A stretch of DNA of 54,634 nt from Girardia tigrina. Its lineage: Eukaryota. Location of the stretch: positions 27,749 to 82,382 of the forward strand of contig MQRK01199881.1 of the NCBI GenBank assembly GCA_001938485.1. The letters run 5' to 3'. The translations under genes were made by a program, and so were the position numbers. Below the pieces are notes generated by a model that ran no database searches, had not been told where the DNA came from, and was given only the letters and a program-made list of their open reading frames with translations. Shown in pieces: positions 4,588 through 28,406 of the stretch. Positions within the stretch are counted from its first letter, which is position 1; each line of letters starts with the position of its first letter.

Positions 4588-5423
4588 TTACTTACCATTT
4601 AAACAGACAGAACCCATATTATTCGAACACATTTTATCCCAAAATTCATCCGAACTATTTTTGTAGGTCATGCAAGTTTCACCATTACTAAACCATTTAA
4701 TGTGTGGATAATACGACGATTTGTTGTCAGTCCAATATATCGAGCTTGGACGATTGATGTCATAGACGTTGACTGGAGTGGCGACCTTCATGTCGACCCA
4801 AACGCGATCTCTGTCAAACAAATAAATGTATATTATTAAAGTTATATTTGTTTTATCATTTTTCTATAATATCTTCAAACAATGATTACTAAATAGTCGA
4901 AAAAGGTTCTAAAAAGTTTTAAAGTTTATAAATATTTACAGAATTGATTACCGAATGAAAATTCAAAAAATAAAAATGATTTTATTTTTAAGAAAGCCGT
5001 TCTTTAATAAATTTTAATCAATTAAAAATTTTATTTATTTTATGTAATTAATTAAAATTTTGCAAAAAATTCTTTCTATGATAATTCGTTTTGTTTGACT
5101 TTTTACAGATTATATTTCGAAGTTTACGAAAATTATTTTTCTTATTGCTTATGATTTAATACTTCATTAAAATATTAATTGTAATAATAACTAATTAGAT
5201 TAAACAAGATTATAACTCACATATTCAGTTTCTGGAGTTCGGCTTTAAAAGAGACATATTGTTCTTCTGAGTAAAGTATTGGCAGTGCCATTCCTTTGGA
5301 GGAACACAAGGTCTTCGAAGTTGAAAAGTCTTTATCATCACTTGTTACCTGGACGAGCTGTAAGGTTGAAATCTTTGATGGAATATAAACAGAATAAATT
5401 ATATATAATATCACATAATTCAT
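4588..5423 (-). CDS. Secreted C-type lectin domain protein, copy A (exon 1 5423-5221; exon 2 4810-4596, or to stop at 4588)
   Basis: Hydrophobic N-terminus; GTGAGT donor and tttgacAG acceptor join in phase 2; CTLD pattern C-SSKGMALP...VWVDM...C-MTY...FWDKM-C...V-C with four canonical Cys; possible further donor G|GTAAGT at 4595. Confidence 0.8.
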
Positions 5424-5944
5424 TGAAAAATATATAGAATAATAAATGGGAAACTAATTTTATAGTATTATATATAATTATCGCTCAATTGTAAGCATAA
5501 AACATTTAATTATATCCCCATGGGTCAGTAAAAATGTGGAACATGAACGTAATTTCTGTTCAATTATTCGATATAATATTAATATTTTATAAAAATGTAT
5601 TTCCCATGATAATAAAACTTTGAGGTAATTCAACAACCTGCTTGAAATGAATTTTGTTTATTACTGAAACAATAAAACCTCGTTTTATTACCCGATATTA
5701 AAAATAAACATGAATATTTACAATTTAGTCAAAGTGTTTCTTTTGTTCGACGAGTCAATTTATAATTTATAAGGTAAATATTAACAATAATCGACTATAA
5801 TTGACATTCCTTGACGACCAAAGAGAATCTGTGTGTTTGTTGAATATATTTTCATAAAATATTAATAATATAAATTACAAGATTTATACAATATCTGAAG
5901 GAATTTGAGATAACAAAATTAAGATGAACCATCAACTGTTTCAT

Positions 5945-6183
5945 CGGTAAACGAGCATAAATTCTATTTTAGTATTTTACCAATATCGTATTTATAAAAA
6001 TATCGTGGTTCTGATTCTTTACGATAAAGTTCGCTAAAACATTCCATATTTCTGTGACCATCTAATGCTGTCTAGATCTTGAATTAAATCATTTATTGTT
6101 TTTAAAGATTCAGAATTCGTCAAGTAGAATCGATGATATTTCGGACGATTCATTTTTAGTTTGACGACGTTAACGATGTTCAT
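5945..6183 (-). pseudogene. Decayed ubiquitin-like domain fragment
   Basis: RFYLTNSESLKTINDLIQDLDSIRWSQKYGMF aligns ungapped with ubiquitin [32 protein letters not shown]; after a stop and frameshift, YDIGK/NTKIEFMLVYR resembles YNIQKESTLHLVLRLR. Confidence 0.5.
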
Positions 6184-6200
6184 TTTGCATCGCTCCAGAT

Positions 6201-6220
6201 CAGGTGTCGGCAACCTTTCA
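6201..6220 (+). mobile_element. hAT-type terminal inverted repeat end (orphan)
   Basis: caggtgtcggcaaccttt resembles the common hAT end CAGGGGTCGGCAACC. Confidence 0.4.
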
Positions 6221-6468
6221 ACACTCAAATTATCAAATAAACCTTTGGAGGGAGAATATTAAAAAAATTTTATCTCTGTAAAAACAATCCAAATTAAATT
6301 TAGTCTTACAATAATTTGGAGATCCTATTCAAGTTATTCTAATTTTATTGTTAAATCATTATTTTATCTCTGTAAGCAGAATTATAATCAAAACCAATAA
6401 ATGTATGTTGCGTAACGTATGCATGGAATGTTCTAGATGTGATCTCTGTATTGTTATGTAATAGTTCC

Positions 6469-9400
6469 TGTAGTGACCACCTTTAAAATACGAAAATTAT
6501 AATTACAAAAGAAAAATTAATTTTCATAAAAATATTTATATTAATTTAAAATACATATTAATATTTATATTATATTTATATTAATTTATAAATTATTTAT
6601 AAGAACACAAAAAAAACTTTTTGTTTTAATAATAAAATTTTACTGATCTTTTAAAAAAGCCTTATTTCTTATCAAAAAATATATTTAGTTTATTTTTATC
6701 CACTGGCTCTAAATTCAAATGGATGAAGAACACCCAAATCGGGAAGCGTTCGGAAACCACTCGGTGGGGATTTTCATATTGCAGGCAAATCGCTTCACAA
6801 AACTGGTGTCAGAAGAAAAAAATGGTGGCTCAACTCCCCGATAAATCGACTCATCCGGATGCCATTTTGTCTTCAACAGATCTATGAAATCAGATTAGAG
6901 ATCGGCATTCCAAGCGACAGTCCTCACATTACTGCACTGAACTTCCCGATCCGGTAATCAGCTATTCTGGTCGCGGAAAACACTGGGCAGACTAAAGCAA
7001 CCGCTGGTCCGATGACAACTCCGACAAAACATATCGACGATTCAGAGACCGACGGCTTTCATCAATCGACAAATTGCGTTCAGATCACAGTCCTATCCGA
7101 TCACCGGTCGCACGACCAACGGCGATCGGGTGATTGAATTCCCCGGTCGATTAATCAATGCGAACATCGCACTAATCAGAGAGAAACCGATTCATTCAGA
7201 CCAGTAACTGATAACTCAGGCGTAATCCGAATCGAAAGCCGTTCCGATCGGATGTTAGCAGCTGTTCTATCGATAACCTCTGCGACCGAATTCAATGACG
7301 AACCGAAGAGCGAAAATCCGAATCACCTTCGGACCGATCAGATTTCTCCAGTTACCGGCTCGACAACCACTCCGAAAACCACGATTCGCCAACCAGTAAA
7401 CCGAGTCGTAAATCAAACCGAGCGGGTGCTGAGAGATACTGTTCCAGAGCAAACTTCGACCGATCACATCTACGAGTTTGAAACCGTAGAGTCAATTCTA
7501 CGTCTACGATCCGGAAATTCTTCAACATTGAGCAGTCGGACCACAGTCTTTATCGATTACTGTTCACACAACAACTGTTGTATTATATTATATTATAATA
7601 ACGTATATATAAATCATATAAACATTTTTTATTTATACTATATATTCAATATATCAATTTCATTTGGGGTATTAACTACATTCCTGTACCGATTTAGGTG
7701 GGACAACGATAATACAAAATTAATCACATATGGCGGATTTTTGATTGTAAATAATCACATACATATCGATTTAAAAGCCACATTTGCATATTCCGTAAGT
7801 ATAGAAGTTTCCTAATCGCAACCTGACAAGCTCCATAACTTTAGACTTCAAAATCTAAAACATACCTCTATTATCCATCACGTTTATCAACATCACCGCA
7901 ACAATACATTGAATACTGAACACAGTAAGGCGAATTACACGTTTCACAAAGAGTCACACTTCAACACACATCGCAGTCACAACAACCGCACACACGAAAC
8001 AATTCAGATCATAAGCATCACCATTCGAAGCCTCACTGACCTCTCGAAAAATGCTTTTGATGTTAATATTATGTCCCCTATAGCTGATTTCATTTCCACC
8101 CTTGAGACCCTGAAAAAGTCCCCATTATACTTATTATATGGTGTAAGACCCTTCGTCCACACCTCACATGGAGCCAGTATGATATTACTGATAATACTGT
8201 ACTCAGTTTCCAATTTACCATACTTGGGGGTAGTGATGAACCGACCGATTTAAAAACCGAACCGGTTTCCGATATCAGCGCTCTGACGATCGCATCGCCG
8301 AAATTTTTCACCGATCAGACCGATTCACCGAAGGTTTGGCTTGAGATCATGGACTTTAGATTCAAGATCATGGGGATCAAGGCGCAGCATAGCCTATTTC
8401 AACATCTACTCGGAGCTATTCCGGAATATCAGCTGTAAACAATAGCACCTCACCTGACTAAGATCGTACATCATTCGGAGCTGTACAATCAACTCCGAAA
8501 ACGCATTATGATGGCTCACGAACCGAAATTTGATGTCGTCTTCGAAAACTATTTCCAGACGCAACAAATTGGTCTCGCCAAGCCATCACAATTTTTACAA
8601 CGAGTCATCGGTGACCTGGAGTTGATTCAACCGGGGATCACACAGGATAAAAACAATGAAATTTTGAAGACATTTTTCTTCCAATCGCTTCAACCGATGC
8701 ACAAAGCCATTCTTGCAGTCACGAGCACCACCGATTTGCAAGAATCAGCAAAAATGGCCGACAGAATCTCCGAAAAGGTGCCATCAAGTTCGAATACTTG
8801 TTACAATGTTGCAACACCAATCACCGAAAATACCGGTCCGAGTTCGGCAGCACAAGAAAGCACACAAATTGATCGATCAAGATCATGCGCTAATGGTTGC
8901 AAGTACCAACCGATAAAAACACTAAGTTCCTCTTCGGTTTTTGCAACCGACTCAGAAAACACCAACAATTTATGCGGCATTTTCACGTGCAACGCCACCA
9001 TCGACAATCATACCTCTAATATGATATCATTCTTGACTGACACCGGATCTGCAATATCAGTATTACCTCGTCGATTTCATCCGTGCAACATTCCCACTAC
9101 CAGATAACTCAAAGTCACAAATGAATCTATTGTTCATACATATGGAACCGTTCAATTGTCATTTTCATTGACACAACTGGACCAGAACCTCTTTTTTTAT
9201 GGACTTTTACTGTTGCTGATGTCACGCAACTTATACTTGACGCAGACTTATTTGATCATTTTGGACTTTTGGTGGACTGCAGAAACAAAAAGCTCGTCTT
9301 AAACTGCTCTTTGGAGACCCTTCTCACTACACTGACTGCAACACACACCAACCTTTAAATCTGACAATAATCCGTTGACCACTTCCTCTTTGTCTTGCAA

Positions 9401-10120
9401 AAGAAGCAAATCAATTTCTCTCTGGTGCCTGATTCTAACCAGCGGTCTGACTACTCTCCGGTGGTCCTTGTCAATAAACCCGAGCAGTTTCTGGGTTCAA
9501 CCAAGCCAGTGAACTCATTAGCCCAGACTGGTAAACCAAAGGAACCACCTTTCACTAATTCAGCCGAACCACCAGCTAAATTATTCTATTCATCTACGGT
9601 TACCATCGATTTCAAAGATACTATTTGTTAACATCAGCAAGCTAAATCTATGCATCCACAACAAGGATACGACTTTTGACACTCCGTTTTCACCAATAAA
9701 GAAACGCTCAGTCTCCATTTCACCGTGGGCTCAATTTAGCGATTTCCAGATTGCTGCTATCTAATCCTAGTCCACCACCATGCTCCGCATCTTTCGTTGG
9801 GGACTGATGTAGTGACCACATTTAAAATACAAAAATACAAAAATTATAATTACAAAAGAAAAATTAATTTTCATAAAAATATTTTTACATATTAATACTA
9901 AAATACGTATATAAATTATTTATAAGAACACAAAAAACTTTTTGTTTTAATAATAACATTTTGCTGATCTTTTAAAAAAGCCTTATTTCTTATCAAAAAA
10001 TATATTTAGTTTATTTTCATCCACTGGCTCAAAATCCAAATGGATGACGAACGCCCAAATCATGCGCTCGGATACCACTCGGTGGGGATTTTCATAATAC
10101 AGGCAAATCGCCTCAAAAAA
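6469..10120 (+). mobile_element. Non-autonomous Ty3/Gypsy element with both LTRs (6469-6802, 9808-10120), gag and protease, no RT/RNase H/IN core
   Basis: Two LTR copies starting tgtagtgaccac; PBS tggtgtcagaag at 6804; PPT-like gttggggactga before the 3' LTR; TSD gttcc/gttac; gag-like SPKFFTDQTDSPKVWLEIMDFRF at ~8290-9100; protease FLTDTGSAISVLP. Confidence 0.85.
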
Positions 10121-10418
10121 GTTACGAAATAGTGTGTATGGTGAAATGAATGAGTGGGTGTTTGACCCAGATTGATGACGACATTAATCAATATATTCTG
10201 ATGATATTCCTCATTCTAGTTTCTTAGGAAGATTATATCGTCTTTGAATAAATATTATGAGAGTCTTGAAGTCTTCTAACAATTACAATTCAAAACTTTT
10301 AAAAAAATAATTAATCATTTTCTAAACTTTATTATGAACATACTATTTATTCATGCACTATAAAAAATATAAAAATTACTGTGCTTCTCGGAATTGAACA
10401 TTTTCGACAAACTCATGA

Positions 10419-10880
10419 TTTGAGGAATATTTGGTGTATTAATGTTTTTGTGTAGTGTTTGCATGTTTAAATGTTGTTTGTTGATTTTGGATTGTGCCTC
10501 TCCTAATCAGATAAAGGATTAATATTTTAATTCCTTTAATCTAAAACTAATTTATTTAAATTTAGATTTAATATTCAAATTTTTAATTTTTATTATTGTA
10601 AATTTCAAATAATTTTATTGATTTATTTTTGTAAATTTTTAAATAATTAAAAACAAATTAATGTTTGAATATGATCATAAAAAGTATTTTATTTTAGCCA
10701 AAAAATCTAAATTAAATATTTTAAATAAAATAAAGTTTGTTCAGATTATAATAAGAAATATTAAAAAAAATTGAGTGATGGATTTAAGTAAAAGTAATGC
10801 TATTAATCATCATAGAGATGATAAGAAATGTGAATGTAATAAATGTTCTGTCAAATGTGTGAGTTCTCTTAACAATCATA
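10419..10880 (+). mobile_element. Solo LTR-like repeat; family also at 19740-20198 (inverted) and ~11820-12205 (diverged)
   Basis: Reverse-complement match to 19740-20198 (gaggaatatttggtgt...gtgcctctcctaatcag...ttgagtgatggatttaagt). Confidence 0.7.
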
Positions 10881-11029
10881 ATTCGGAATATACTTCGAGG
10901 TTCCAGTTCTTAGACATTATCAAGGTGAGAATCAGTTAGTCTCGAATAATATTTAGACTTCAAATATTCCATATTGGAAAAACTACTTTCACAATAATAT
11001 GTCGAAGCACAATATGAAAAAATTTTCAA

Positions 11030-12730
11030 AGCATAAATCATCAATAATGAATATTTATTTTCATCAACCAATTTCCAAAATTTTCGTCATTCTTATGTGC
11101 TTTTAAAATTAAGTCATTTTTCATTATTATAATTTCTACTCCCAAGGCTTCAATGGTGCTACTTTTAAAATATATTGTAATAATTTCAGCAATGTCACTA
11201 TCTGTAGAATCAAATGGGTTAAGGAAGTAGCATACAATTGGAAAAATCTGTGAATGGCGCACAAAACTCTTCCATAAGTATATCGAAGTGTGATGCCAGT
11301 GAAGTAATTGTTGTTGTTGTATAATTTTTGCATCTAAATGTTCAAAAATTTTTTTTTAATTTTGAAAATATACCAAAGAATTTTTCATCAGATGAGACTT
11401 TTATAACGTTAATTTGCTTGTAAATGCTTTTATTGAGACCAACATAATATGTAGGTTCTTCCCTTGTAAACTTAAATTCAGCTCATTAAGTTTTTCCATT
11501 ATATAAGTACGAAAGCCAGTAGCAATTAATCAATTTTTGTTTTCTAGTTGCTCGTAATATTGATTGCTGGGTGAATTAAATTCTCTGATTTGCGGAAAAA
11601 GTTTTATAAATCATTGCAGAATTATACCTCTGTTAAGCCATCTCACTTCGGTGTGTAGTAGAAGATCATTAAATTCGACATCTTGTTCAGCTAAAATTAG
11701 TTTGAATAATCTGTGCTGCGTTGATAGGGATAGAATTTATAATTTTTCTTACTGTTTGCATTATATGCTTAAATGCTAACTTTTGCCCATAATATTTCCT
11801 GATGGATGATGCTATGGTATTGTGAGGAATATTTTGAATGTTTGATGTTTTATGTTTGAATGTTGTATATTGATTTGGAATTATGTCTCTCCTACCCAGA
11901 TGGATGATCAATATTTTAATTCTTATTATCTGAAATATGTAATGTTTAAATTTATTTCTAATTTAAAATAATTGTAAAATTTTAAATAAGTTATTTAATT
12001 TTATTTACAATTTTTTATAAATAAATCGAATTAATATTTTTTAAATAATTAATAATCATTTTAATTTTTATGCAATAAATTTTGAGCAAATATATTAACA
12101 AATTGATTATATTACAATCTGTTAAAAATAAAAAGATTAAAGACATTAATCAATTAGTTAGAACTAAGACAATCTTAAAATTGTTTTTTATTCTTAGCTT
12201 ACATGTGTAAAATCTTATAAGAAGTAATTGTTTCTTTTTTGGTGGCTGGGTTAGCTTTGTAAAAAATTCTGTTTTCATGACAAAAAAGACTTCAGATCTG
12301 CAATCTTTTTATTCCTTTTTTCTGCATTTAATGGAAAATTGCTATTAATATTTGATTCCAGAGTTATAAAATGCCTTTCAACGTTACTTTTCTTAGACAT
12401 TGAAACTGTGTCATTGCATATTAAAATCAATAAAACAAAATTGTTTTTCCCAGTCATCATTAAAATAATAAATTCTTTACTTTTCATTCTTGTTAATTAT
12501 CATGGATAGCCTTTGTAAAATTAATAAATAATAAATAATATTGAGAACTTATTAAGCAGGGATGTTATTGGCTGCAGATCCACTTTTTGAAGATTTTAAA
12601 AATAAAAATGAACTAAAATCAGCCATTAATGTGATACATTTATCAGCGAGAACCGTGACTAGAAAAATCGAGATATTGAAATTAACAAATGACTTAACAA
12701 AATGTATATTTTTTTCATTTCAACTTAACA
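11030..12730 (-). mobile_element. Fragmented hAT (SPIN/GTF2IRD2-like) transposase, with one internal piece (~12560-12730) on the + strand
   Basis: Minus strand: CNDTVSMSKKSNVERHF, YHSIIHQE, LLLHTEVRWL, FLNPF; plus strand: LFEDFKNKNELKSAINVIHLSARTVTRKIE. Confidence 0.75.
11820..12205 (+). mobile_element. Diverged solo LTR interrupting the hAT transposase
   Basis: Starts tgtgaggaatatttt, similar to the 10419/20198 LTR family; ends near gcttaca. Confidence 0.5.
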
Positions 12731-13253
12731 AATGAATTACTTTTTAGTATTCTTCATTATAATTACTTCTAACTGAATATTATTATTAGGAAATAAAAAG
12801 TCTGCATTTATCAAAATATATTGAATTACCAAACTATCACAGTGGGTGGGGCAAATTCGTCAGTTTTTTACACTTTTTAATGTAAAAATTTCCACATAGT
12901 TGTAATCTTCAATATTAAGTGCTACTTTGGCCGGTGTGAAATAAAATTTCTCTCCACCAATGAAATTTTTTAAAATATTTACTCCCATGACACGAATTTT
13001 TTATGAAATTTACAGAGACACGCTTTACAAACACCTCTAGTCATTCTTGTAATGAATTATTTCATGACCGATTAAATTGCCAAAATCTGACCACAACGAA
13101 TAACTTTGTTACTGTTCATTTTAGGACATATGTTGACTTCAAATAAGTTGTTTAAAATTGAATAATCTATAAAATGAGTCATTATTTAACTTGTTTTTCC
13201 AAAAATGTTTGAAAAACTTTGTTATGTAATTTTTTTATGATGCTAGATTTGTA

Positions 13254-13730
13254 TTAGTCAATATACAATATATGAACCCTAAACTTCAATATGAATAAAA
13301 ATAGAAAGCAAATATCAATAATACTTAATTCATTAATGACATCCAAACAGTCTACATCCTGATCATCTACATCTTCCCCGGAAATAGACTCGCAGGGAAA
13401 TTGTTCAATCTGGTTTGAAACAGCCAAAGCCTCGCAAAACTTTCTACGACACACATCATACTTTGCTATATGCCAATCGTCAGGGTTCGAACTAAATCCT
13501 GATGATATTATTGAGTTTTGTATGGTTTCGGTTTTCAATTCATTTAATTTAATTAAATTATTTTAAAAATTAATGATTTTTTTTCAAATGATTTTTAAAA
13601 ACTTAAATAGAGTGATATTAATAGGGTCGTGATATTATTTAAATAGTACCACTAAAAAAATTTTAAATTGGTGATATTATTTGGGTCGTGATACTATATG
13701 GGTTGGTGATACTAATTGGCGATATCCGTT
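13254..13730 (-). mobile_element. Possible DNA transposon remnant (acidic ORF plus terminal gtgata(t/c)ta subrepeats)
   Basis: 94-aa ORF with acidic tail; repeated gtgata(t/c)ta motifs at 13610-13720. Confidence 0.3.
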
Positions 13731-13769
13731 ATTTATATATATATATATAATATTGAGTCTTGTGAAAGC

Positions 13770-14100: not shown

Positions 14101-14104
14101 TTCG

Positions 14105-14140
<36 letters not shown>

Positions 14141-15138: not shown

Positions 15139-15214
15139 GTATATATATATATATATATATATATNNNNNNNNNNNNNNNNNNNNNNNNNNNNNNNNNNNN
15201 NNNNNNNNNNNNNN

Positions 15215-18651: not shown

Positions 18652-19337
18652 TTTTTTATTATTTTGTCAATTTATTTAAAATTCTCTTTTAAATTGATAA
18701 TTGAAAAATTTACGATTGTTCACAAAATTTTATTTTAAAAGAAAACTGAGACAGATTGGCGCATTTTTTAAAGCTAATTTTTAAAATTGTGATAACAATT
18801 CACAAATAAAAAACATTCTTCACACACGCACACATTCAACCAATTAACACACATGCATGCAGACAATTCATCAATCATTTACATTAAACAAAACACACAT
18901 TCACTGCATCACACCAAAAATTAAAATAAAAATGAGGCTCACCATTTCATTAACTAATCCAACGAAATTTGTGATTACATAATTTGACTTCATTTAGCAA
19001 TCGATCGACTATCACGAATATTTTTTTCTTTAAAAATTCGACAATTACAATAAAGAAATTTTACGAAATTCGACAATTAAAAATAACTCAAATGATATTC
19101 TTTAATTTAATTGTTTTATATTTAGTTATTTTATTTATTTAATTTATTTACTTAATTTTAAATAGATTTATTTAATTATTTTAATTTATTAATTTATTTA
19201 TATATTTTTTTTATTTATGGATTTCTGAAACTTGCAAAAATGTTCGGTCAAATTGGCAATTCTCCGCTCCACTTATCAATATTGATTTCTTGCCATTATT
19301 TTGAGATTGAAAGTGTAATTTAAACGGACAGATAACT

Positions 19338-19740
19338 TTGCCTTTTGGTTATTTTTTTAATGTGGAATATTTTATCAAGACATGCGGAGGCATTTATGAA
19401 CCATGGTATGAATTGATGAGAATATTTCAAAGTTGTGGAAACAATATTGGAATGATGTTTTGGAAAATAATCATTAATGAACACGGAATCAAACCGACCA
19501 CTGGTGTTTACGAAGGCGACAGTGATTTGCAATTACCGAGAATTTACGTTTACTTTACTTTTGGAATTCATGGAAAATGTGTGCCAATCAGCGTTATGGT
19601 TGAATTGAATAGTACCACTCTCGCTTATGTACTGAATTCGAACCTTGGGAAATTCTTTCATCCCGATTATTTCATCGGAGGTTCCTCAAGTGCTTCTAAG
19701 AATTGCGAAAGACATACGGTCCTCTTCAGAGCCAAAATTC
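19338..19740 (+). pseudogene. Highly divergent beta-tubulin N-terminal fragment truncated by an LTR
   Basis: CGNNIGMMFWKIIINEHGIKPTTGVYEGDSDLQLPRIYVYF..GKCVPISVMVEL..LGKFFHPDYF versus beta-tubulin [62 protein letters not shown]. Confidence 0.85.
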
Positions 19741-20198
19741 GTGATTGAAAATTGGAGACGGATTGGACAAAAACAATTACATTTATTACAATTTTGATCA
19801 TCTCTATTACAATCACTATTATCGCTCGAACTTAAATCCATCACTCAATGTTTAATAGTTCTCATTACAATCTGAATTAACTTGAAGAAGATTATTTTAT
19901 TTAATTTAAATTTTATTGGCTAAAATAAAATTACTTTTTATAATCATTTTTAAACATTAATTGGATTTAATTATTTAAAAATTTACAAAAATAAAATCCA
20001 TAAAATTATTTAAAAGTTACATTTATAAAAATTAAAAATTTGTATATTAAATCTAAATTTAAATAAATTAGTTTCAGATTTAAGAATTAAAATATTAATC
20101 ATCCATCTGATTAGGAGAGGCACAATCCCAAATCAACACACAACATTTAAACATACAAACACTACACAAAAACATCAACACACCAAATATTCCTCACA
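19740..20198 (-). mobile_element. Solo LTR (inverted copy of the 10419-10880 family)
   Basis: Minus strand starts tgtgagga and ends caatcacg; matches 10419-10880. Confidence 0.7.
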
Positions 20199-21299
20199 AT
20201 GAGAATGAAATTGATCACGTTTAATGTATTTTCAATTAATTTTTAAATAATTAATTTTAATATTTTTTTACTAATTTTCATTCATAAATTTATTTTTATC
20301 CAATAGATTTTTGTGAATTCTGTTTTAATATATTTACAATTGTAAGTGAACCTTCAATCACTAAAATTGGCTCAAATGATTAATGAAATATTTGTCGAAA
20401 TTAGTTGTCTGATTTTCATTTCATGAAATTCTTTTCCTCGTCAACATCCTCAATCTTAGTCTCGGTTTTGGTCGTTGAGAATCATTGTCCTTTTTAATCA
20501 TTTATTTGATAATGATCGAACGTATGAATGTCTTCTTATTGTTCTTACTTGTGTCAAACTCGAACTTAAACTAATAGTACAGCTATTTATTTCAACATAA
20601 AATAGTCTTTTTAAAAAAGAGGAATACGATACATTCTTATACACATTAAAGTTTAATGATTAAAATTTTGCTTTAAAGTGTCTAACTACCAAGAAGACTT
20701 GATATGAAGACGGAATTTTTCATGATGTTCTAGTCAAAATTCATACAGGAAAAAGATTCAATTCAAAAAAATTCAATTAATTTTCCTCACAAAAAAGAAA
20801 CTTTTCTACCCAAAATTAAATTAAATTTTAAAGAATTGAAATATTGTTACAGCAGAAGTGACGAAACAACTTTCTTTCATTCTCACAATACCTTTTATTT
20901 TTATTTCTCTTTTTAAAGAAATGTATAATTCTTGATTGTATTATTATATGTATCAACAAAGTAACTCGCATGTTGTTCATTGATAACTTCCACTTAAAAC
21001 CCAAAAAACCTATTTTTATGAACATTTATAAAAAATTGAGATAGAACGATTTAATTCACATATAACATAATAATGGCGTTTACCAAATCAAATAAAACAA
21101 CAAAAAATATATTTTCTAAAACACAAATGTTACAGATAAAACAAACGATCTACAGAAGAATAATCGCAATAATAATCATAATAATAATAATAAAATAATA
21201 GTAATCATAAAATAATAATATATATTTGAAAAAAAATATAAAATAATAATAGAATAAAATATCCAAAAAATCGAATTGCGGAGGTAGTAGATAGGTCAC

Positions 21300-24200
21300 A
21301 TGATAGATGGTGGAGCGATGTTAAGCTGAACAATCACAATGTATTAAGGTTGTGAGATAGTGGAGCTGGTGGTTTAGTTTTTACTGAAAAGATTTGGTTG
21401 CAAATCGGAGTTAGAAAAGAGTCAAATTATACTAAATGGAGCGTTTTCAGAAGGCCATAAGTGTTTGGAGAAAATGACAGTGAAGTTGAAATGGAAAGAA
21501 GAGTGCCTTATGGTAGATATTTTAGTTGTAAAAGCAATCCTACTAGCAGTCATTGAAGGTGTTAATGTCATGCATAAATTCGGAATCAAACTTGAAAAAA
21601 GTATCAAGTAGTCAGTTATGATGGTGGAGAAAGATATAAAGCAGGAAGAGCAAAACAAACGACTGGAAGACCTTGTGAAACGATATGATGATATTTTCAT
21701 GAAACATGAATATGATTTTGGATTTACGGATATTGTGGTTCATAAAATTGAAACAGAAGGTAAACCGATTTTTCTTAATCTAAGAAGGCAATCGATTCAT
21801 GTATAAAGTCAAATTGAAGGATTTTTGAAAGGATTAGAAAAGGCAGGTATAATTCGGAAATGTAAAAGTGAATGGACCTCCCCGTTAGTCATTACACCAA
21901 AGAAAGATGGGGGTATTCGAATTTATTTAGATTTCAGGAAATTGAATGATGTATTAACGAAAGTTTCCTTTCCAATGCCAGACAGCCAAATGTTAATGGA
22001 TGCTCTTGGTGGTTCCAGAATTTTTTCAAGTACGGATTTTGGCAAAGCATACTATCAAGTAGCATTGGATGAAAGTTCTCAATAAAAAACTGCGTTTTGC
22101 ACAAGAACACAACAGTTTTGTTTTAACCGTGTACCGTTTAGACATTAACCAGCACCCGGAACGTTTCAAAGAATAATGAATTCATTATTTGAAGATTTAC
22201 TATTCTCTGGAGTAGTAATATACCTAGATTATGTCTTAATTTACTCAAAATCAATGGATGATAATATAAAACTATTAGAAGAAGTTTTGAATAGACTGAA
22301 GAAAGCAGGTTTAAAAGTCAATCCAGGGAAATGCAAATTCGGAGTGGGGAAGTTTGTATTTCTGGGACATACAATTAACAAAGAAGGTATAACAACAAAT
22401 AAAATAAAAGTTGCAGAAATTAAAAATTTTTTGATTCCAAAGTGTACTTGATATTTTCGAGCATTTTTAGGTCTGCGTATCTAATATTGACGGTTTATCA
22501 AGACTTAAACAGAATCAGAAGCACCTTTGCAGAGTACATGAAGCGGAAAATGTAAAGAAATATTTTGGTCTGACGAGGGCAATAGAAGTTTTAACGAATT
22601 GAAGCAAAAGCTATGTGGTGCACCAGTATTAGCATTTGTGAACCCGAATAATAATTTCATCTTAGATACAGATGCATCATTCGGATCGATAGGAGCAGTA
22701 TTACGTCAAATAGCAGAAAAGAAAGAAGTAGTAATCGCGTATGCATCGAGGACTGTACTACACATGAAAAAGGGTTCTGTGTGACAAGGAAAGAACTATT
22801 AGCTCTACAAGAGTTCATGTTACCTTTTATTCAATATTTATATGGCAAGCGATTTAAAGTAAGAACTGATCATAAAGCACTTGTATATATGAAGAGTACT
22901 TCCAAACCAATAACTCCTCAATTTCAGACATGGTTAGCAAACATGGCAAATTTTGACTTTAATTTGAAATATAGAAAAGGTGGCTGTTATTATTTCAATC
23001 TATAGAAATAATAATTCCACGAAAAAAAAAATAAAATTCCAACTAAGAATTATCAAATTTATTTTGTATGAAACATTAATTCCAATAATTAATTATAAGC
23101 CATTAAAATCAATTTCATAATTTCTATATATAGTTAATAATATAAATAACAATAAGTAGTACGGCACTACAGTGACAAACATGCGAATGCAGATGAATTG
23201 TCAGTTATATGACGGCGTCTGTGTACAATGTGAAACAAAATATGAAGAACCAAAATCAACAAAAGCAAGGGTGAAACACATCAATACAGTGGTGATTCAG
23301 TCTACAATTCAATGGATAAAAGACGAACAAGAGAAGTGCTCAGAGTTGAAACAAATACATGAGATGGTAGAGGGTGAAAAAAATGAAATCATCAAGGAGT
23401 TATTACAACTAAATAACCAATTAGTTTATCAGAATCAGTTATTGGGTGGGCAGGAAGGAAATTGTGTGTTACCATTGGTTCCGAAGAAAATTAGAAGAGA
23501 TTTAACAGGAAAATACACAGAGATTTATATCATGTAGATATCAAAAAGACAAAGAAGTATATCCAAAATAATTTTCTGCTACCAGATTCAACAAAAGAGG
23601 CGCAAATCTTTACAGGAGAATATCAAGAATACATACACAGAAAGATTTAAAGTGAAAAAACAAAAGAGAAGTTTATTTGAATAAGAAGCGACGAGTTCTT
23701 AGAGAAAGTCGTAATGGATATTGCATATGTGGGTGAGAAGAATAGCATGTACCCATATATATTGGTGATAGTGGACCAGTTATCGAAATAAGTCTCTTTG
23801 ACGGAGATTAGAACTCAAGCGAACACATGATAGTTCAATGCGTGTTGATAAAATGGATATATAGATAGGGGAAGCCAAAAATAATATTAACAGACAATGG
23901 AAAATGTTTCACTACCGGATTAATTTAAGATCTTTGCGGGAGATACGGAATCGAAAAATAATTTAGTAGCTAATTTAAACATCAATCTAACGAACTGACA
24001 GAAAGAACTATTCAAACAGTGAGAGACATTTATAGTAAAAAGCAGAAGAGACACAGACGAACGATCATGGTGGCTAATTGTTCCGACGATAGAATTCTAT
24101 CTAAATGCAACAGTCCAGAGTACGACCGGATATTTTCCCTTCGTAGTTGTGTTTTGTAGAAAATAAACTTACATGTGGTAGCAGGAATAGCTAAAACGGA

Positions 24201-24575
24201 AGAGAGCAACGTCATCAAGATGAAAGTAAAAGAAAATCTAGAGAAAGCGGCAAGACAATTGGAAAATTAGGAGAGAGAAAAGAGAACAAATCGACATTTT
24301 GAGGATGGTTAGAAAATCTTTGTAAAGCAAGATCCTACAAAACTGNGNAAGGACACTTTCCCATTCGANGGACAGTACCAAATTTAAGGCATATATCNNC
24401 ACACNCATTNGAACTACAGAATCTGAAAGATGGAAACATAATTCGTNGAAGAATTGAGTGGATTAANAAANTNAANAACGAATTATAAAAGAGGGGAAAG
24501 TTGTGATTATTTATTTGTTNANGTATTCTNAAAGATTGTAAATAATNAATATATTCTACTTGTTGATATTNTGAC
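21300..24575 (+). mobile_element. Degenerate Ty3/Gypsy pol (protease, RT, RNase H, integrase, PPT); contains duplication copy B
   Basis: DSGA protease; SEWTSPLVITPKKDGGIRIYLDFRKLN; IYLDYVLIYS (mutated YxDD); FILDTDASFGSIGAVL; RFKVRTDHKAL; PPT at ~24487-24500. Confidence 0.93.
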
Positions 24576-26185
24576 TTCTGAATTGAAACCTGCAGATTTG
24601 ACGTTAAATATCCAACTAGATTAATATTTTCATTCCAACCTTGAATAATTAGGCATAGTCGTTCCTTTGGTACTTAATATTTACTAACTCTTTTCGTTAA
24701 CTTCTCTCCACGTAAAATTTGTTGAAGTTTTATTTCAGTATAATTTTGTTCTTTTTTAAGCGCATCATGAAANTTCCAAATATTAGGGTAGAATNAGGTT
24801 ATTAATTCACTAAAACCTCGATCCCATCCTTTGATATTATTATTATTATTATTGGTNCTTGGAAGTCCGGTNGTAATGTTATCATAAGAATTGCANATGT
24901 TAAGTGGAAATTTAAGTTTTNTGCGANTGCCATTTTGATAGCATTTCTCAATTCAATTATCCTNAAAGTAACTAACAAACCTNAACACCTCTGCTTCTGA
25001 ATAAATTTAAGATGAATCGCAAAGTNCTTCAAAATACGTCACAAGATTCGTCGAAGGAACGAATGTTAAAGAACTAAATTTTTTCATGGACTGTTGAAAG
25101 TTTATATCGCTCTTATATTAAGACTTTAATTCAATAGAACAAATTAGTCTATAAATACATTGAGAAAAGTGATAATAACAGCCTCTATGACTAGGATTTT
25201 AAAAAATGGATGCAACTGCTCTTATCATTGACAATTAAAAGTCTGTCATAAAAGTAATTAGAGTATGATTTAGAGTTAACTCTTTCACTTTATTCAAAAG
25301 ATACTCGTAGCTTCTTGAGCTTTTATCTGCCAGAAGAGCATAAGTCAATGGTAACGATGTTTTTTATTGCATGGATAGTATAAAGTTGTCAGAATAATGA
25401 TGGAACTACCTTAAATGTTCTATCAGTATACCAGTGATCACTTTCCCTAAGAACGCTAAGATTGTTTTGAGTTCCAAATATCAGCAATCTATCTTTAGTC
25501 TTGCCAGAATCTAACAGTAAAAATAAATCACCTCGAAATGTAAATTTATATTTATCCTCAATGGTCATTAATTCTCATAAAACAGGAAGTGTGGGAGCTG
25601 GAAAATTAATATTTCTAGCATACCGCATTCGTCTTTTAATATTACTAAACGTCGGTAAGTTTACTGTTATCTGTGTATCTACAGAAATTAGAGAATCTGT
25701 TATAATAACAGAAGGGGAATAATGAGTGTCTATGGGAGCACTTATAACTTTACTCGATGTCTTCTCAGCTATAAATTCTGTTGTATCTTCGTGATGATTG
25801 TGCTCAAATGAAGTTCGAATGAGAGTATATCCCATTGTTATAGCTCTTGCAGGGCAAGATATTCTGAGATATTGGACGCATTCCCAATATATTTTTACAT
25901 TTTATACATTATTTTTATAAAATGTCCGTCCATTTAAAACAAGTTTAAAGTTATTTTGTGATGACCGAATTAATTCTACGTCTATTTTTTATCTAGAAAA
26001 TTAAATAATAATATTTACTAAATTACCAAAATATTTATTAATATTTACTTTTAAAATTATTAATATTATTATTATTTTATTATTATTAATATTTATTTTT
26101 AAAAATATTTACTAAAATATTTAACTTACACTTCAAATATATTGCAATTCGACTTCTTTTAATGATTAAAACAAATGTATTTTTA

Positions 26186-27000
26186 AATAAACTTGAAAAA
26201 GATGGCAATTTTTATTAAAAACAAATAAACGCCATTTAAAAGTATATTTTAGGATAATATATTTGACGGTTTAACCGTCATCATCAGATCACTGATTATG
26301 TTCTTTTTAATTGCTTTTATATAAGAAATGAATGATTATGTAATCACTTACGTAAGTCTGAGTGAAAACTCACAAAAACTGTTTATGAAGGTGTATAAAC
26401 CAGTATCAGTTTTCTTTCGATATATTTCAGTTTCATAATGATCATTTTTCCTTTCAATTAACAAATCAAGGAATGGTAATTTTCCGTTTATTTCCTGTTC
26501 TACTGTAAAGATTATATTTGGATGAATCGAATTCATGTAATCTAGAAAAGGAAACACATGTTCTCGAGATTCAAAGACTAGAAAGATATCATCCACATAT
26601 CTCTTATAAAGTAGTGGTTTTTTCTCCAAAAACAATTCTATTTTTTCTTCAATGGAAGAAAGAAATATAGAGGCTAACGTCGGAGCCAATCGTGAACCCA
26701 TTGCAACCCCATCTATTTGTTTGTACCATTCACCATTAAATAGAAAATGGACTTTTGAAGTAGCCAATGTTAAGAGTTTTCGAAAAGCAACTTCATCTAA
26801 ATCAGAATTGTGCAGATTATTCTTACGCCAAAAGATTTTTTGCAAGCATTTTAAAAATTATTGAGAGAGTGTCATGTGAAGCATTGTTAATAAGATCATG
26901 TGATCCAAAAATCAATGTTCAAACAGTACTCTCAACTAATTTGTTAAGAGTTTTTGATTAGACTTACGTAAGTGATTACACAATCATTCATTTCTTATAT
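26186..27000 (-). mobile_element. Rearranged Penelope-like element (RT fragment on minus, GIY-YIG C-terminus inverted on plus) with 13-bp TSD
   Basis: FLFNGEWYKQIDGVAMGSRLAPTLA, RYVDDIF, LPFLDL, IYRKKTDTGLY; plus-strand CEALLIRSCDPKINVQ; aaatgtattttta at 26173-26185 and 27001-27013, single copy at the paralogous empty site ~4406. Confidence 0.9.
26253..26291 (-). ncRNA. Degenerate minimal hammerhead ribozyme in the PLE 3' end
   Basis: GAT-CTGATGA-T-GACGG(TTAAA)CCGTC-AAA-TATA-TT-ATC; the G of the GAAA box is missing. Confidence 0.6.
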
Positions 27001-27016
27001 AAATGTATTTTTATTA

Positions 27017-27400
27017 CTAGCTTTAATTACGTTTCATTTGTTTGTTTGTCTGTCTGGATGCATCAAATCTTACGATCAAAAATTCACCCACTTCCCGTTC
27101 ACCTAGCGACATGAAACTTTCAGGACTGATGCATTCTATTCACTTTTTCACTGTCACTGTTCATCTACCGCGTTTAGTTTGGCCGCAAAAAGTAATTAAA
27201 GTGTCGTTCTCATGTTTTCCTCAGTAGTAGGCTTTGAAATTTGCTACATCTAAATGCAAATAGAAAGCGGGTTTTCGCCTAGTAGGCTTTGATAATTCAG
27301 TCAAAAAAATGTGGGAAGTGGGTGAAATAGATACAGAACCGCAAACATATGACAAATTATAAAAGCTTGTACACCAAAAATTTTTTTGGTATGATTATAC
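27017..27400 (+). mobile_element. Insertion specific to copy B containing a DINE/Helentron- or Helitron-like element
   Basis: gtttgtttgtctgtctg microsatellite; gcg(ggtttt)cgc hairpin followed by CTAG at 27279-27282; flanked by ttatta repeats; absent from copy A. Confidence 0.5.
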
Positions 27401-27570
27401 TTATTAAATATTTGATTACGGAAATTATAGTTATAGCAATTTTGACTTTAGAAATTCTCGTTGTAGAAATTTAAGTTTAGAAATTGTCGTATTCCATTTG
27501 GTCATAGACCATTGTTTATATGTATATAATAATATAAATATTGATAGTAATATTAGTGATTTCTGCGACC

Positions 27571-28406
27571 TTACTTACCATTTAAACAGACAGAAATCAT
27601 AGTACTCGAACACATGTAATCCCAAAATTCATCCGAACTATTTTTGTAGGTCATGCAAGTTTCATTATTACAATTCCATTTAATGTGTGGATAATACGAC
27701 GATTTGTTGTCAGTCCAATATATCGAGCTTGGACGATTCAATTCATAGACGTTGACTGGAGTGGCGACCTTCATGTCGACCCAGACGCGATCTCTGTCAA
27801 ACAAATAAATGTATATTATTAAAGTTATATTTGTTTTATCATTTTTCTATAATATCTTCAAACAATGATTACTAAATAGTCGAAAAAGGTTCTAAAAAGT
27901 TTTAAAGTTTATAAATATTTACAGAATTGGTTACCGAATGAAATTTCAAAAAATAAAAATGATTTTATTTTTAAGAAAGCCGTTCTTTAATAAATTTTAA
28001 TCAATTACAAATTTTAATTATTATATGTAATTAATTAAAATTTTGCAAAAAATTCTTTCTATGATAATTTGTTTTGTTTGACTTTTTACAGGTTATATTT
28101 CGAAGTTTACGAAAATTATTTTTCTTATTGCTTATGATTTAATACTTCATTAAAATATTAATTGTAATAATAAATAATTAGATTAAACAAGATTATAACT
28201 CACATATTCAGTTTCTGGAGTTCGGCTTTAAAAGAGACATATTGTTCTTCTGAGTAAAGTATTGGTAGTGCCATTCCTTTGGAGGAACACAAGGTCTTCG
28301 AAGTTGAAAAGTCTTTAGCATCACTTGTTACCTGGACGAGCTGAAAGGTCGAAATGTTTGATGGAATATAAACAGAACAAAGTAGAAATAATATCAGATA
28401 ACTCAT
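27571..28406 (-). CDS. Secreted C-type lectin domain protein, copy B (exon 1 28406-28204; exon 2 27793-27579, or to stop at 27571)
   Basis: Paralog of 4588-5423 with the same splice sites and open frame; CTLD cysteines retained, plus one extra Cys in the domain (WNCNNETC). Confidence 0.8.

What the first reader, a model, noticed from the sequence alone, without database searches (positions are those of the whole stretch)
4588..28406. Duplicated secreted C-type lectins whose lectin-domain exon diverges faster than the intron
Seen by manual alignment: exon 2 (215 bp) has about 15 substitutions giving 9 amino-acid changes (DI>EL, FS>NC, G>N, K>Y, NN>ST, G>I) with only 1 purely synonymous site, and many changes are multi-base within a codon. 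The 410-bp intron has only about 8. Changes cluster in the long loop and around the WD motif and last cysteines, which form the ligand-binding surface in CTLDs (established). Canonical EPN/QPD motifs are absent. Inference: a diversifying family of immune-recognition or mucus/toxin lectins under positive selection.
Basis: partly seen in the sequence, partly recalled or inferred. Interest (0 to 1): 0.8.

Follow-up and report, generated by a model that had tools for sequence, protein, structure and literature searches.

The report
Fast-diverging tandem flatworm lectin-like genes
Two neighbouring flatworm genes for small secreted lectin-like proteins have almost identical introns but differ by clustered amino-acid changes in three loops; the same pattern recurs in a family of 70 or more such genes and is best explained by selection for diversity acting on copies that also recombine with each other.

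Summary
Genes A (5423..4588, minus strand) and B (28406..27571) each have a 203-nt exon 1, a 410-nt intron and exon 2. Exon 2 differs at 15 positions (9 amino-acid changes, 1 synonymous); the intron differs at 8.

The fold is a divergent C-type-lectin-like domain without EPN/QPD. Pfam does not reach threshold, but a folded relative matches only CTLDs.

The neutral baseline is not simple. Gene A is a chimera: its promoter and signal-peptide start come from a third copy, D, upstream on the contig, and the rest comes from B, with the breakpoint at 5350-5367. Contigs from other individuals carry other A/B mosaics, so the copies exchange sequence.

Even so, exon-2 non-synonymous divergence (7.8%) exceeds the pooled flanking non-coding divergence (2.75%; P=0.002), and the 15 changes hit only 10 codons (P=0.0003). 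Independent young pairs elsewhere in the family repeat the pattern. Site models on 55 family members favour a positively selected class (about 16% of codons, omega about 2, P about 1e-7) that includes 5 of the 10 A/B codons.

Exon 2 ends in a family-wide splice donor. One RNA contig joins it to a mucin-like exon on another contig.

Verdict: real, and partly supported as diversifying selection; the biological function was not tested.

The parts
5221..5423 (-). Gene A exon 1: ATG at 5423, a hydrophobic signal-peptide-like start, and the N-terminal half of the CTLD including Cys40. It ends in phase 2 at a GT donor.
   Evidence: The splice to 4810 is seen in RNA contigs of run X3.
4811..5220 (-). 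Gene A intron 1, 410 nt, GT..AG. It has 8 differences from B's intron.
   Evidence: Joint 4810->5221 in two X3 contigs.
4588..4810 (-). Gene A exon 2, the C-terminal half of the CTLD (Cys114, Cys129, Cys137). It reads through to TAA at 4590-4588. A conserved phase-1 donor G|GTAAGT lies at 4596|4595, so the spliced exon would be 215 nt.
   Evidence: An X3 contig leaves the window at exactly 4596.
28204..28406 (-). Gene B exon 1.
27794..28203 (-). Gene B intron 1, 410 nt.
27571..27793 (-). Gene B exon 2, with the donor at 27579|27578. B keeps the family's extra Cys109, which A has lost.
4756..4759 (-). Variable patch 1 in A (codons 85-86, DI versus EL), in the loop after the WVDM strand. The B equivalent is 27739-27742.
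   Evidence: Site 86 has posterior 0.84-0.93 for omega>1.
4682..4692 (-). Variable patch 2 in A (codons 108-111, FSNG versus NCNN), in the loop directly before beta3. This is where EPN sits in canonical lectins. The B equivalent is 27665-27675.
   Evidence: Site 108 has posterior 0.37-0.89. Site 109 (Cys) is under purifying selection in the family.
4613..4635 (-). Variable patch 3 in A (codons 127-134, K..NN.G versus Y..ST.I), running from just after the FxD (WND-equivalent) through Cys129 to the last strand. The B equivalent is 27596-27618.
   Evidence: Sites 127, 131 and 132 have posteriors 0.86-1.00. Sites 131 and 132 each changed in 4 of 11 independent young pairs.
5350..5367 (-). Recombination breakpoint inside exon 1 of gene A. 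Upstream of it A matches copy D; downstream it matches copy B.
   Evidence: At sites where B and D differ, A=D at 72 of 79 sites upstream and A=B at 233 of 255 downstream.
5424..6016 (-). 5' flank (promoter region) of gene A. It is derived from copy D: 96-98% identical to D over 5424-5800, against 57-76% to B.
146..5621 (.). Copy-A side of the segmental duplication, paired with 22381-28612. Divergence is a mosaic: 2-11% at 146-2250, 0% at 2251-4168, and 2-7% at 4169-4587.
22381..28612 (.). Copy-B side of the duplication. It holds 27 single-letter N at 24346-25026, which were left out of all counts.
26186..27400 (.). Insertion of about 1.2 kb found only in B's 3' flank. It carries a reverse-transcriptase fragment (ORF 26348-26845).
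   Evidence: RVT_1 E=1.5e-6, just under the Pfam cut-off.
15165..15214 (.). Assembly gap between the two genes. It is not part of either gene.

Best explanation
A and B are two members of a tandem array (B, A, D in the direction of transcription) of planarian genes. Each encodes a signal peptide plus one compact, Ca2+-motif-less C-type-lectin-like domain. Gene A arose, or was overwritten, by non-allelic homologous recombination: it has D's promoter and signal-peptide start and B's gene body. That is why the A and B introns are about 98% identical. Since then both copies have accumulated almost only amino-acid-changing substitutions. These are packed into three loops that are hypervariable across the whole family of 70 or more genes, while the hydrophobic core, the cysteines and the neighbouring non-coding DNA stayed nearly unchanged. 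The most likely cause is diversifying (positive) selection on a ligand-contact surface, acting against a background of recombination and short-tract conversion that keeps homogenising the rest of the genes. Shown: the gene structure, splicing, the chimera, the substitution pattern, and the family-wide site heterogeneity. Inferred: that the three loops form one binding surface, that the ligands are external (microbes, prey or mucus partners), and that the proteins are secreted.
For: (1) Counts: 14 non-synonymous and 1 synonymous change in exon 2, against 8/410 in the intron. dN is 0.082, dS 0.026 and the intron 0.020. P=0.002 against 944 nt of non-coding DNA of the same age class (the A-B intron and 3' flank, and the A-D 5' flank). 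The 15 changes hit only 10 codons, P=0.00025. (2) Exon 2 of A lies inside a continuous B-derived tract: A=B at 53 of 63 informative sites in the exon, 115 of 121 in the intron and 56 of 59 in the 3' flank. It therefore shares the flanks' recent ancestry. The few D-like sites are isolated and do not form tracts. (3) Polarising with copies C and D puts changes on both lineages. Codons 108, 132 and 134 changed in both. None of the new states occurs in C or D. (4) Family replication: in young pairs other than A-B from clades that keep all four cysteines, pN is 0.065 and intron divergence 0.024, P=0.0003. Over all nine pairs the ratio is 1.65, P=0.0008. (5) Of 78 recent amino-acid-changing codon differences in 11 independent pairs, 60 fall in the 37 variable codons and 18 in the 32 conserved ones, so the core is still constrained. 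(6) Site models on 55 unique exon-2 sequences: M0 omega is 0.44; M2a beats M1a with LRT 31 (P=2e-7), placing 16% of codons at omega 1.9. With 41 cysteine-intact sequences the LRT is 31.9, with 18% of codons at omega 2.0. Codons 86, 108, 127, 131 and 132 of the A/B differences fall in that class. (7) Both reading frames are intact, and spliced B-type and D-type transcript contigs exist in run X3. (8) CTLD fold: the family relative P0003 was folded at pLDDT 77. All of Foldseek's top 50 matches are CTLDs, and VIA-align gives Z 6.2-7.3 at rmsd about 3 A over 90-108 residues. 28 of 30 Atlas neighbours are Lectin_C.
Against: Against synonymous sites alone the A/B excess is not significant (P about 0.2). 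The duplicated segment has very uneven divergence, from 0% over 1.9 kb to 8-11% at its far end, so 'neutral' depends on which flank is used. Contigs of two other individuals show different combinations of A and B states. In X1 the B-type exon-2 patch sits next to an A-type 3' flank at about double depth. The A-type patch at 4613-4692 was not seen in X1, X2 or X3. Conversion between the copies is therefore ongoing, and the A-type patch could be an older segment or come from an unassembled donor. Recombination, saturation at deep nodes and multi-nucleotide mutations are all known to inflate M2a-type tests. My codon models used branch lengths fixed from a nucleotide tree. Omega for the selected class is only about 2. 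The fold evidence comes from a relative, not from A or B, and its Z of about 7 is middling. No A-type transcript was seen. The true 3' end of the genes is open.
Confidence: 0.6

Rival explanations
1. Neutral mosaic of ages. A and B are old duplicates that are repeatedly patched by short gene-conversion tracts. The intron and flanks were homogenised recently, while the exon-2 patches escaped by chance and keep their older divergence. No positive selection is needed.
For: Divergence along the duplication runs from 0% to 11%. Gene A is demonstrably recombinant. X1 and X2 carry other A/B mosaics, including a B-type patch in an A-type flank. With only about 40 synonymous sites in exon 2, one synonymous difference is compatible with either 2.7% or 6.7% neutral divergence. 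Earlier notes of this scan report conversion mosaics in other paralog pairs of this genome (not checked by me).
Against: Escaped old DNA should differ at synonymous sites and be spread along the exon. Instead 14 of 15 changes are non-synonymous and hit 10 codons (P=0.00025). Even at a 6.7% neutral level with M1a-type constraint, about 7 non-synonymous changes are expected against 14 observed (my estimate, P about 0.02). The same exon excess recurs in unrelated young pairs. The patch states in A and B are not shared with C or D.
Confidence: 0.15
2. Templated diversification. The clustered multi-base changes were pasted in by micro-conversion from other family members or from unassembled copies, as in chicken immunoglobulin or some MHC loci. 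They are not new point mutations.
For: The changes are clustered: 5 codons carry two changes and 4 pairs of changed bases are adjacent. The assembly is very fragmented (255,254 contigs) and has collapsed or duplicated copies. The B-type patch has about double depth in X1, which hints at an extra copy.
Against: No assembled paralog carries the A-type or B-type patch states. After A and B, the nearest exon-2 relatives are only 62% and 59% identical in protein, which is too far for homologous conversion. The D-like sites in A's exon 2 are isolated single bases.
Confidence: 0.1
3. Relaxed constraint. A and B are 5' partial copies of a longer lectin-mucin gene that lost their downstream exons. They drift as young pseudogenes, and multi-nucleotide mutations make the changes look clustered.
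For: Exon 2 ends in a splice donor that is conserved across the family, and no third exon was found within 1.5-8 kb. No A-type transcript was seen. A lost the otherwise conserved Cys109. Many young pairs have omega near 1.
Against: Drift cannot push the non-synonymous rate to about 3 times the rate of adjacent non-coding DNA. Both frames are intact. Conserved codons are spared in A/B, apart from Cys109, and in young pairs generally. A B-type transcript is spliced at both junctions.
Confidence: 0.1
4. Assembly artefact. Near-identical paralog introns were collapsed or polished to one consensus, and exon variants were assigned to the wrong copy.
For: There is a 1.9-kb stretch of 0% divergence whose first 733 bp are a high-copy repeat, and copy B has 27 single N in 24346-25026 where A has ordinary letters. 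The A-type patch is seen only in the reference.
Against: Independent runs reproduce all eleven B-type letters at 4613-4692, several A/B intron differences (4947, 4961, 5087, 5109), and the A-specific hybrid junction at 5305-5479 with no differences. Errors would not preserve the frame or concentrate in the family's hypervariable codons.
Confidence: 0.05

Closest known systems
[quoted passage not shown]
   Same: Both are small secreted CTLD proteins without sugar-binding motifs, encoded in tandem clusters, with KA/KS above 1 between young copies. In both, coding regions change faster than the non-coding DNA around them.
   Different: This is a planarian family with no detectable sequence relation to snaclecs beyond the fold. 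No venom context is known. The extra cysteine lies between W107 and Cys114, not in the long swapped loop that links snaclec chains (the snaclec position is from my own knowledge). Heterodimer formation was not tested. Here the acceleration is confined to about 12 codons of one exon.
MHC class I/II peptide-binding exons versus their introns (established knowledge, not checked in the library)
   Same: Exon-restricted hypervariability sits in the ligand-contact residues, while flanking introns are kept similar by recombination and conversion. Different individuals carry mosaic alleles.
   Different: The fold and biology are different. Balancing selection, allelism and trans-species polymorphism are not shown here, and the A/B differences are between paralogs in one assembly.
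Planarian C-type lectin-like genes already described: Girardia tigrina SCARF family (Shagin 2002, as cited in PMC514892 and PMC7958881) and Dugesia japonica DjCTL (Gao 2017, cited in PMC7958881)
   Same: These are secreted CTLD proteins of planarians, expressed in gland, mucus and epidermal cells according to those papers. DjCTL is induced by bacterial products.
   Different: SCARF proteins are described as dual-CTLD proteins that keep the Ca/carbohydrate-binding residues (PMC514892). The family here has one CTLD and lacks those residues. I could not compare sequences, because none of those proteins is available in the tools.
Canonical Ca2+-dependent C-type lectin CRDs (mannose-binding protein, DC-SIGN, mannose receptor CRD4)
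   Same: The predicted fold of the family relative matches. The four cysteines have canonical spacing. There is a WIGL-like strand (VWVDM/VWINM) and an FxD..C motif at the place of WND..C.
   Different: There is no EPN or QPD. The loop between the conserved W and the beta3 cysteine is about 7 residues shorter. The Asn of WND is not conserved. Pfam Lectin_C does not reach its cut-off.

Membership tests
C-type lectin-like domain (Pfam PF00059 Lectin_C / CTLD fold) | Sequence match to the Lectin_C profile at the curated cut-off | tested here: not met
Single exons of A and B give no Lectin_C hit at E<=1. The full-length relative P0003 matches profile positions 3-106 of 107 at 19.5 bits (E=0.0018), against a cut-off of 22.6.
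C-type lectin-like domain (Pfam PF00059 Lectin_C / CTLD fold) | CTLD fold: two helices plus two antiparallel sheets with a long loop region | tested here: met
   Tested on the relative P0003 (33-40% identical to the A-D exon-2 peptides). The model has pLDDT 77.3 and pTM 0.64. All 50 listed Foldseek matches are CTLDs, with probability up to 0.99 but E no better than 0.01. VIA-align gives Z 6.2-7.3, rmsd 2.8-3.8 A, 89-108 aligned residues, spanning residues 40-171. The scores are middling and were not obtained on A or B themselves.
C-type lectin-like domain (Pfam PF00059 Lectin_C / CTLD fold) | Four conserved cysteines (C1-C4 and C2-C3) at canonical spacing | tested here: met
   Cys40, Cys114, Cys129 and Cys137 are present in A and B. 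The last three are invariant or nearly so in 55 family members. They align with the C2, C3 and C4 cysteines of collectin placenta 1 and agglucetin in the PDB profile search. The disulfide pairing itself is inferred.
Ca2+-dependent carbohydrate-recognition domain (true C-type lectin) | EPN or QPD motif plus WND, which together form Ca2+ site 2 | tested here: not met
   No EPN or QPD occurs in A, B or the family alignment. The W107-to-Cys114 loop has 6 residues. At the WND position the family has F-x-D with a hypervariable x.
Gene family under diversifying selection (accelerated evolution, as in venom CTLPs) | Non-synonymous rate above the neutral rate between young copies | tested here: met
   A/B exon 2 has dN 0.082 against intron 0.020 and a non-coding pool of 0.0275 (P=0.001-0.002). 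Other young pairs in cysteine-intact clades have pN/p(intron) 2.7, P=0.0003. Against synonymous sites alone the test is inconclusive: P about 0.2 for A/B and 0.03 pooled.
Gene family under diversifying selection (accelerated evolution, as in venom CTLPs) | A class of codons with omega>1 in site models | tested here: met
   M1a versus M2a gives LRT 31.0 (55 sequences) and 31.9 (41 sequences), with 16-18% of codons at omega 1.9-2.0. The implementation is my own, branch lengths were fixed from a GTR+G tree, and there was no correction for recombination.
Planarian SCARF family (Girardia tigrina) | Two CTLDs per protein, with Ca/carbohydrate-binding residues retained (PMC514892) | tested here: not met
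   A and B have one CTLD in two exons and lack those residues. A sequence comparison with SCARF was not possible.
Secreted lectin-mucin glycoprotein | CTLD joined in one transcript to a Pro/Thr/Ser-rich domain | tested here: inconclusive
   One X3 contig joins a B-type exon 2 at the donor (4596) to sequence found exactly once in this genome, at C232086:11569. That sequence lies behind a ttacag acceptor and opens an exon of 200 or more residues rich in Thr/Ser/Pro. The exon is on another contig, with no CTLD exon within 11.5 kb upstream. X3 also carries a different organism label.

The most novel reading that the evidence does not exclude
Planarians may maintain, by recombination between tandem copies plus balancing or diversifying selection, an MHC-like repertoire of CTLD heads. 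In this reading the heads are hypervariable only in three loops, are shuffled between promoters by non-allelic recombination, and are mounted through a conserved phase-1 splice donor on mucin stalks. That would amount to a polymorphic recognition layer in the worm's mucus. The A-type patch, absent from three other samples, would then be one allele of many.
Probability: 0.15. Interest if true: 0.75.

Novelty: new member of a known kind. Interest (0 to 1): 0.5.

Why it matters
Planarians live in microbe-rich water, regenerate open wounds and coat themselves in mucus, yet their recognition molecules are poorly known. A lineage-specific family of 70 or more CTLD genes whose variation is focused on about 12 loop codons gives concrete candidates for ligand-recognition proteins and names the residues to test. 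The D/A/B array is also a clean natural example of a hybrid gene made by unequal recombination: one paralog's promoter fused to another's coding body, with the breakpoint mapped to 18 bp. For genome scanning there is a practical lesson. An exon that diverges faster than its intron is a useful flag, but the intron's similarity here was itself produced by recombination, so the signal has to be replicated across the family before it is read as selection.

Tried and rejected
Pfam on the four single exons gave no Lectin_C hit. phmmer of each exon against PDB sequences gave only noise. A family profile against PDB put CTLDs on top, but at E 0.15-0.9. The word-based protein search found no homologue. 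The exhaustive profile search found six proteins. The hit to the multi-CTLD protein P0006 (E=1.9e-5) is the sum of six near-identical repeats scoring 7.5-10 bits each, so I do not count it as strong evidence. The five short relatives are unnamed singletons from ENA (one also in JGI/IMG) on contigs of 0.6-1.0 kb, and no DNA could be fetched for P0003. An alignment that included exon-1 peptides (A3) misplaced them on the C-terminal half and was discarded. I looked for a third exon. The 26 letters that follow the donor in the X3 contig are absent from the window. No Pro/Thr/Ser-rich frame lies within 1.5 kb downstream of about 30 family members, or within 5.5-8 kb downstream of C and D. The contig that holds the mucin exon shares no DNA with the D/A/B part of this contig and has no CTLD exon within 11.5 kb upstream. 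Conversion from C or D as the source of the patches was rejected on the codon table and on the isolated D-like sites. A GC-driven mutation bias was rejected on reasoning, not computation: it could raise the exon rate by at most about 1.3-1.4-fold, and five of the 15 changes are A<->T. The joined (spliced) A and B proteins were not sent to any search, fold or complex tool, under the operators' rule; exons were joined only inside scripts, by coordinates, for dN/dS.

Full report
WHAT IS THERE. The window is AT-rich eukaryotic DNA. A self-comparison shows a segmental duplication, 146-5621 against 22381-28612. At its right end, on the minus strand, each copy holds a two-exon reading frame. Gene A has exon 1 at 5423..5221, a 410-nt GT..AG intron, and exon 2 at 4810..4588. 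Gene B has exon 1 at 28406..28204, a 410-nt intron, and exon 2 at 27793..27571. Read to the first stop, each gives 141 residues: a hydrophobic start, then a domain with cysteines at 40, 114, 129 and 137. Two contigs of run X3 join 4810 to 5221 exactly, so the intron is real and the run behaves as RNA.

THE OBSERVATION. All three segments align without gaps. Exon 1 has 11 differences, nine of them in the first 62 nt. The intron has 8 of 410. The gap at 15165-15214 lies between the genes and does not touch any compared segment. I could not test continuity across it, although homologous blocks keep the same order on both sides as in the neighbouring repeat unit.

IS IT A C-TYPE LECTIN DOMAIN. Single-exon searches fail. 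A profile of 19 family exon-2 peptides puts CTLDs on top in the PDB, in the right register, but not significantly. The Atlas lists Lectin_C clusters for 28 of 30 neighbours. The exhaustive profile search found a 171-residue relative, P0003. It matches Lectin_C over nearly the whole profile but below the cut-off (19.5 against 22.6 bits). Folded with the family alignment (pLDDT 77.3), it matches only CTLDs: all 50 listed Foldseek matches, and VIA-align Z 6.2-7.3 at about 3 A over 90-108 residues. I accept a divergent C-type-lectin-like fold. There is no EPN or QPD, the loop that would carry it is about seven residues short, and the Asn of WND is not conserved. Sugar binding of the classical kind is therefore unlikely.

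THE SURROUNDINGS CHANGE THE READING. Divergence along the duplication is a mosaic. It is 2-11% at 146-2250 and zero over 2251-4168. The first 733 bp of that block are a high-copy repeat, and copy B has 27 single N nearby. Divergence is about 3.8% in the 3' flank (16 differences in about 419 bp at 4169-4587, my tally), 6.7% in exon 2, 2% in the intron, and 15-27% upstream of the ATG. A third copy, D, lies upstream on the same contig (exon 2 at contig 5579-5797, exon 1 at 8173-8373, intron 2.4 kb). A fourth copy, C, is on another contig. A four-way alignment shows that A's 5' flank is 96-98% identical to D's but only 57-76% to B's. From the end of the signal peptide onward, A is 93-98.5% identical to B and 57-93% to D. 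At sites where B and D differ, A follows D at 72 of 79 sites upstream of about 5360, and follows B at 233 of 255 sites downstream. The switch lies between 5367 and 5350. The D-to-A and A-to-B intervals are collinear. Gene A is therefore a hybrid made by non-allelic recombination, and it sits exactly where an unequal crossover between B and D would put it. The A/B intron similarity is thus a product of recombination, and the divergent first 60 nt of exon 1 is largely inherited from D.

DOES THE EXON EXCESS SURVIVE. Exon 2 lies in the middle of the B-derived tract, so it shares the flanks' ancestry. Three stretches of non-coding DNA belong to this age class: the A-B intron, the A-B 3' flank, and the A-D 5' flank. 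Together they show 26 differences in 944 nt (2.75%). Exon-2 non-synonymous divergence is 14 over 179.5 sites (7.8%), P=0.002. The 15 changes hit 10 codons (P=0.00025) and include four adjacent pairs (P=0.009). Nei-Gojobori omega is 3.2 for exon 2 and 1.97 for the whole CDS, but with one to three synonymous changes this is not significant on its own. Polarising with C and D puts changes on both lineages, with codons 108, 132 and 134 changed in both. None of the new states is present in C or D, and the next relatives are 48% identical or less in protein, so conversion from assembled paralogs is unlikely. A also has four lineage-specific replacements in the signal peptide and one at residue 30, with no lineage-specific synonymous change (read from the alignment printed).

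THE FAMILY. The genome has at least 71 exon-2 matches with the same exon limits, and I collected 55 distinct intact sequences. For example, L036/L040 have pN 0.112, pS 0.054 and intron 0.025; L056/L068 have pN 0.090, pS 0 and intron 0.020. Pooled without A-B, the clades that keep all cysteines give pN/p(intron) 2.7 (P=0.0003). All nine pairs give 1.65 (P=0.0008) and pN/pS 1.94 (P=0.03). Older pairs have omega 0.3-0.6. Recent replacements avoid the conserved codons (18 in 32 codons against 60 in 37) and recur at positions 82, 131 and 132 (four pairs each) and at 86, 108, 110, 120 and 127 (three each). Codon models run on a GTR+G tree with my own likelihood code give M0 omega 0.44. M2a beats M1a (LRT 31, P=2e-7; 16% of codons at omega 1.9). 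The result is unchanged when 14 sequences are removed, 13 of them from two clades that have lost cysteines (LRT 31.9). The selected class holds codons 82-84, 86, 108, 113, 119, 120, 127 and 130-132, which includes five of the ten A/B codons. By alignment to the P0003 model and to canonical CTLDs, these codons lie in four places: the loop after the WIGL-like strand, the loop before beta3 (the EPN position), the beta3-beta4 turn, and the stretch from the WND-equivalent through C3 to the last strand.

CAUTIONS FROM OTHER SAMPLES. Contigs of two DNA runs labelled as the same organism reproduce three features: the A-specific hybrid junction (5305-5479, no differences), all eleven B-type letters at 4613-4692, and several A/B intron differences. 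The variants are therefore real. They also show other combinations. In X1 the B-type patch is flanked by an A-type 3' flank and has about double depth. One intron contig is A-type at 4756-4801 and B-type at 4947-5109. X2 has a third intron type. The A-type patch at 4613-4692 was not seen in X1, X2 or X3, although contigs cannot prove absence. The copies therefore keep exchanging short tracts, or are highly polymorphic. This keeps the neutral-mosaic and unseen-donor rivals alive for this particular pair.

THE 3' END. In 50 of 55 members the final 'S/G-K/E' is always written (A/G)GT(A/G)AG, never TCN or AAA, and is followed by unconserved sequence with stops at random distances. That is a conserved phase-1 splice donor, not a conserved C-terminus. 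One X3 contig leaves a B-type exon 2 exactly there and continues with 26 letters that occur once in this genome, at C232086:11569. They lie directly behind a ttacag acceptor and open an exon of 200 or more residues rich in Thr, Ser and Pro. No CTLD exon lies within 11.5 kb upstream of it, and that contig shares nothing with the D/A/B part of this one. Either a further B-like copy is unassembled, or the arrangement differs in the X3 organism, or the assembly is broken. The X3 contig is also itself a mosaic: B-type at twelve sites and A-type at codons 85-86. A D-type spliced transcript is present too. Whether A and B make the 141-residue protein, a lectin-mucin, or both is open.

VERDICT. The best reading (about 0.6) is diversifying selection on three loops of a Ca2+-motif-less CTLD, in a large planarian-specific family whose tandem members also recombine. 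Selection is carried more by the family-wide replication than by the A/B pair alone. The phenomenon is of a known kind, seen in venom CTLPs (PMC6062510) and in MHC exon 2. The described planarian lectins (SCARF, DjCTL; PMC514892, PMC7958881) differ in architecture. Function remains untested.

Noticed in passing
window 2251-4168 vs 23836-25935; single N at 24346-25026: A 1.9-kb block has no differences between the two copies, although its flanks differ by 2-7%. Its first 733 bp are a dispersed repeat with thousands of candidate copies at about 88% identity. Copy B has 27 isolated N here where A has ordinary letters. This could be a very recent conversion or an assembly or polishing effect.
   Followed up: partly
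window 26186-27400 (ORF 26348-26845, minus): An insertion of about 1.2 kb is present only in copy B's 3' flank. It carries a reverse-transcriptase fragment (RVT_1, E=1.5e-6, just under the cut-off).
   Followed up: partly
L075:1501-2170 (G000:C232086:11569 onward, plus strand): A single-copy exon behind a ttacag acceptor encodes 200 or more residues rich in Thr/Ser/Pro (mucin-like). An RNA contig of run X3 joins it to a B-type lectin exon 2, but no lectin exon lies within 11.5 kb upstream on that contig.
   Followed up: partly
all family loci (L001-L070), last 9 nt of exon 2: The apparent C-terminal 'SK/GK + stop' of the family is a conserved 5' splice site, (A/G)|GT(A/G)AG, in phase 1. Gene finders that stop there probably truncate these genes.
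   Followed up: partly
L053 (G000:C138988:2553-4317), one open frame: One family member has a long insertion of nine-residue repeats of the TDTSPIP(T/N/S)I type, followed by further Ser/Thr-rich sequence, inside the lectin exon. It lies between the WINMTV strand and the RPxxIxW motif, so it is a mucin-like stretch within the long loop region.
   Followed up: no
L016-L019 (four contigs): Four identical copies of a family member with an in-frame TGA and a missing residue lie on four different contigs. They are either a repeated pseudogene or redundant assembly. Several intact members are also duplicated identically (L012-14, L023-25, L020/21, L027/28, L069/70).
   Followed up: no
family alignment: Most members carry two N-glycosylation sequons at fixed places (N-M-T in the WINMTV strand and N-x-S before YYP). 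Copies A-D lack both: they read VDMK at the first and D-x-K-S (DNKS, DHKS, DGKS) at the second. Most members also have an extra cysteine two residues after the conserved W (Cys109). B, C and D keep it and A has lost it, which leaves an odd number of cysteines in B, C and D.
   Followed up: partly
window 50147-51061 (minus): An intronless 304-residue frame has a clear galactosyltransferase domain (PF01762, E=1.8e-34).
   Followed up: no
window 46848-47825 (+) and 53492-54214 (-): Retroelement pieces: a 325-residue frame with two CCHC zinc knuckles, and a 240-residue frame with the RNase H domain of reverse transcriptases.
   Followed up: no
window 19338-19748 (+): A 136-residue frame matches the tubulin GTPase domain (E=3.4e-8). 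It may be a fragment or a single exon of a tubulin gene.
   Followed up: no
window 6485-6802 and 9832-10120; ORFs 7252-9107 (+): Two direct repeats (85% identical, 3.3 kb apart) bracket a GC-richer stretch (36-40%) with three open frames of 114-199 residues that have no Pfam match. This may be an LTR-type element.
   Followed up: no
window 10418-10789 vs 20200-19830: An inverted repeat of about 375 bp (87.5% identical) has arms 9 kb apart in the A-B intergenic region.
   Followed up: no
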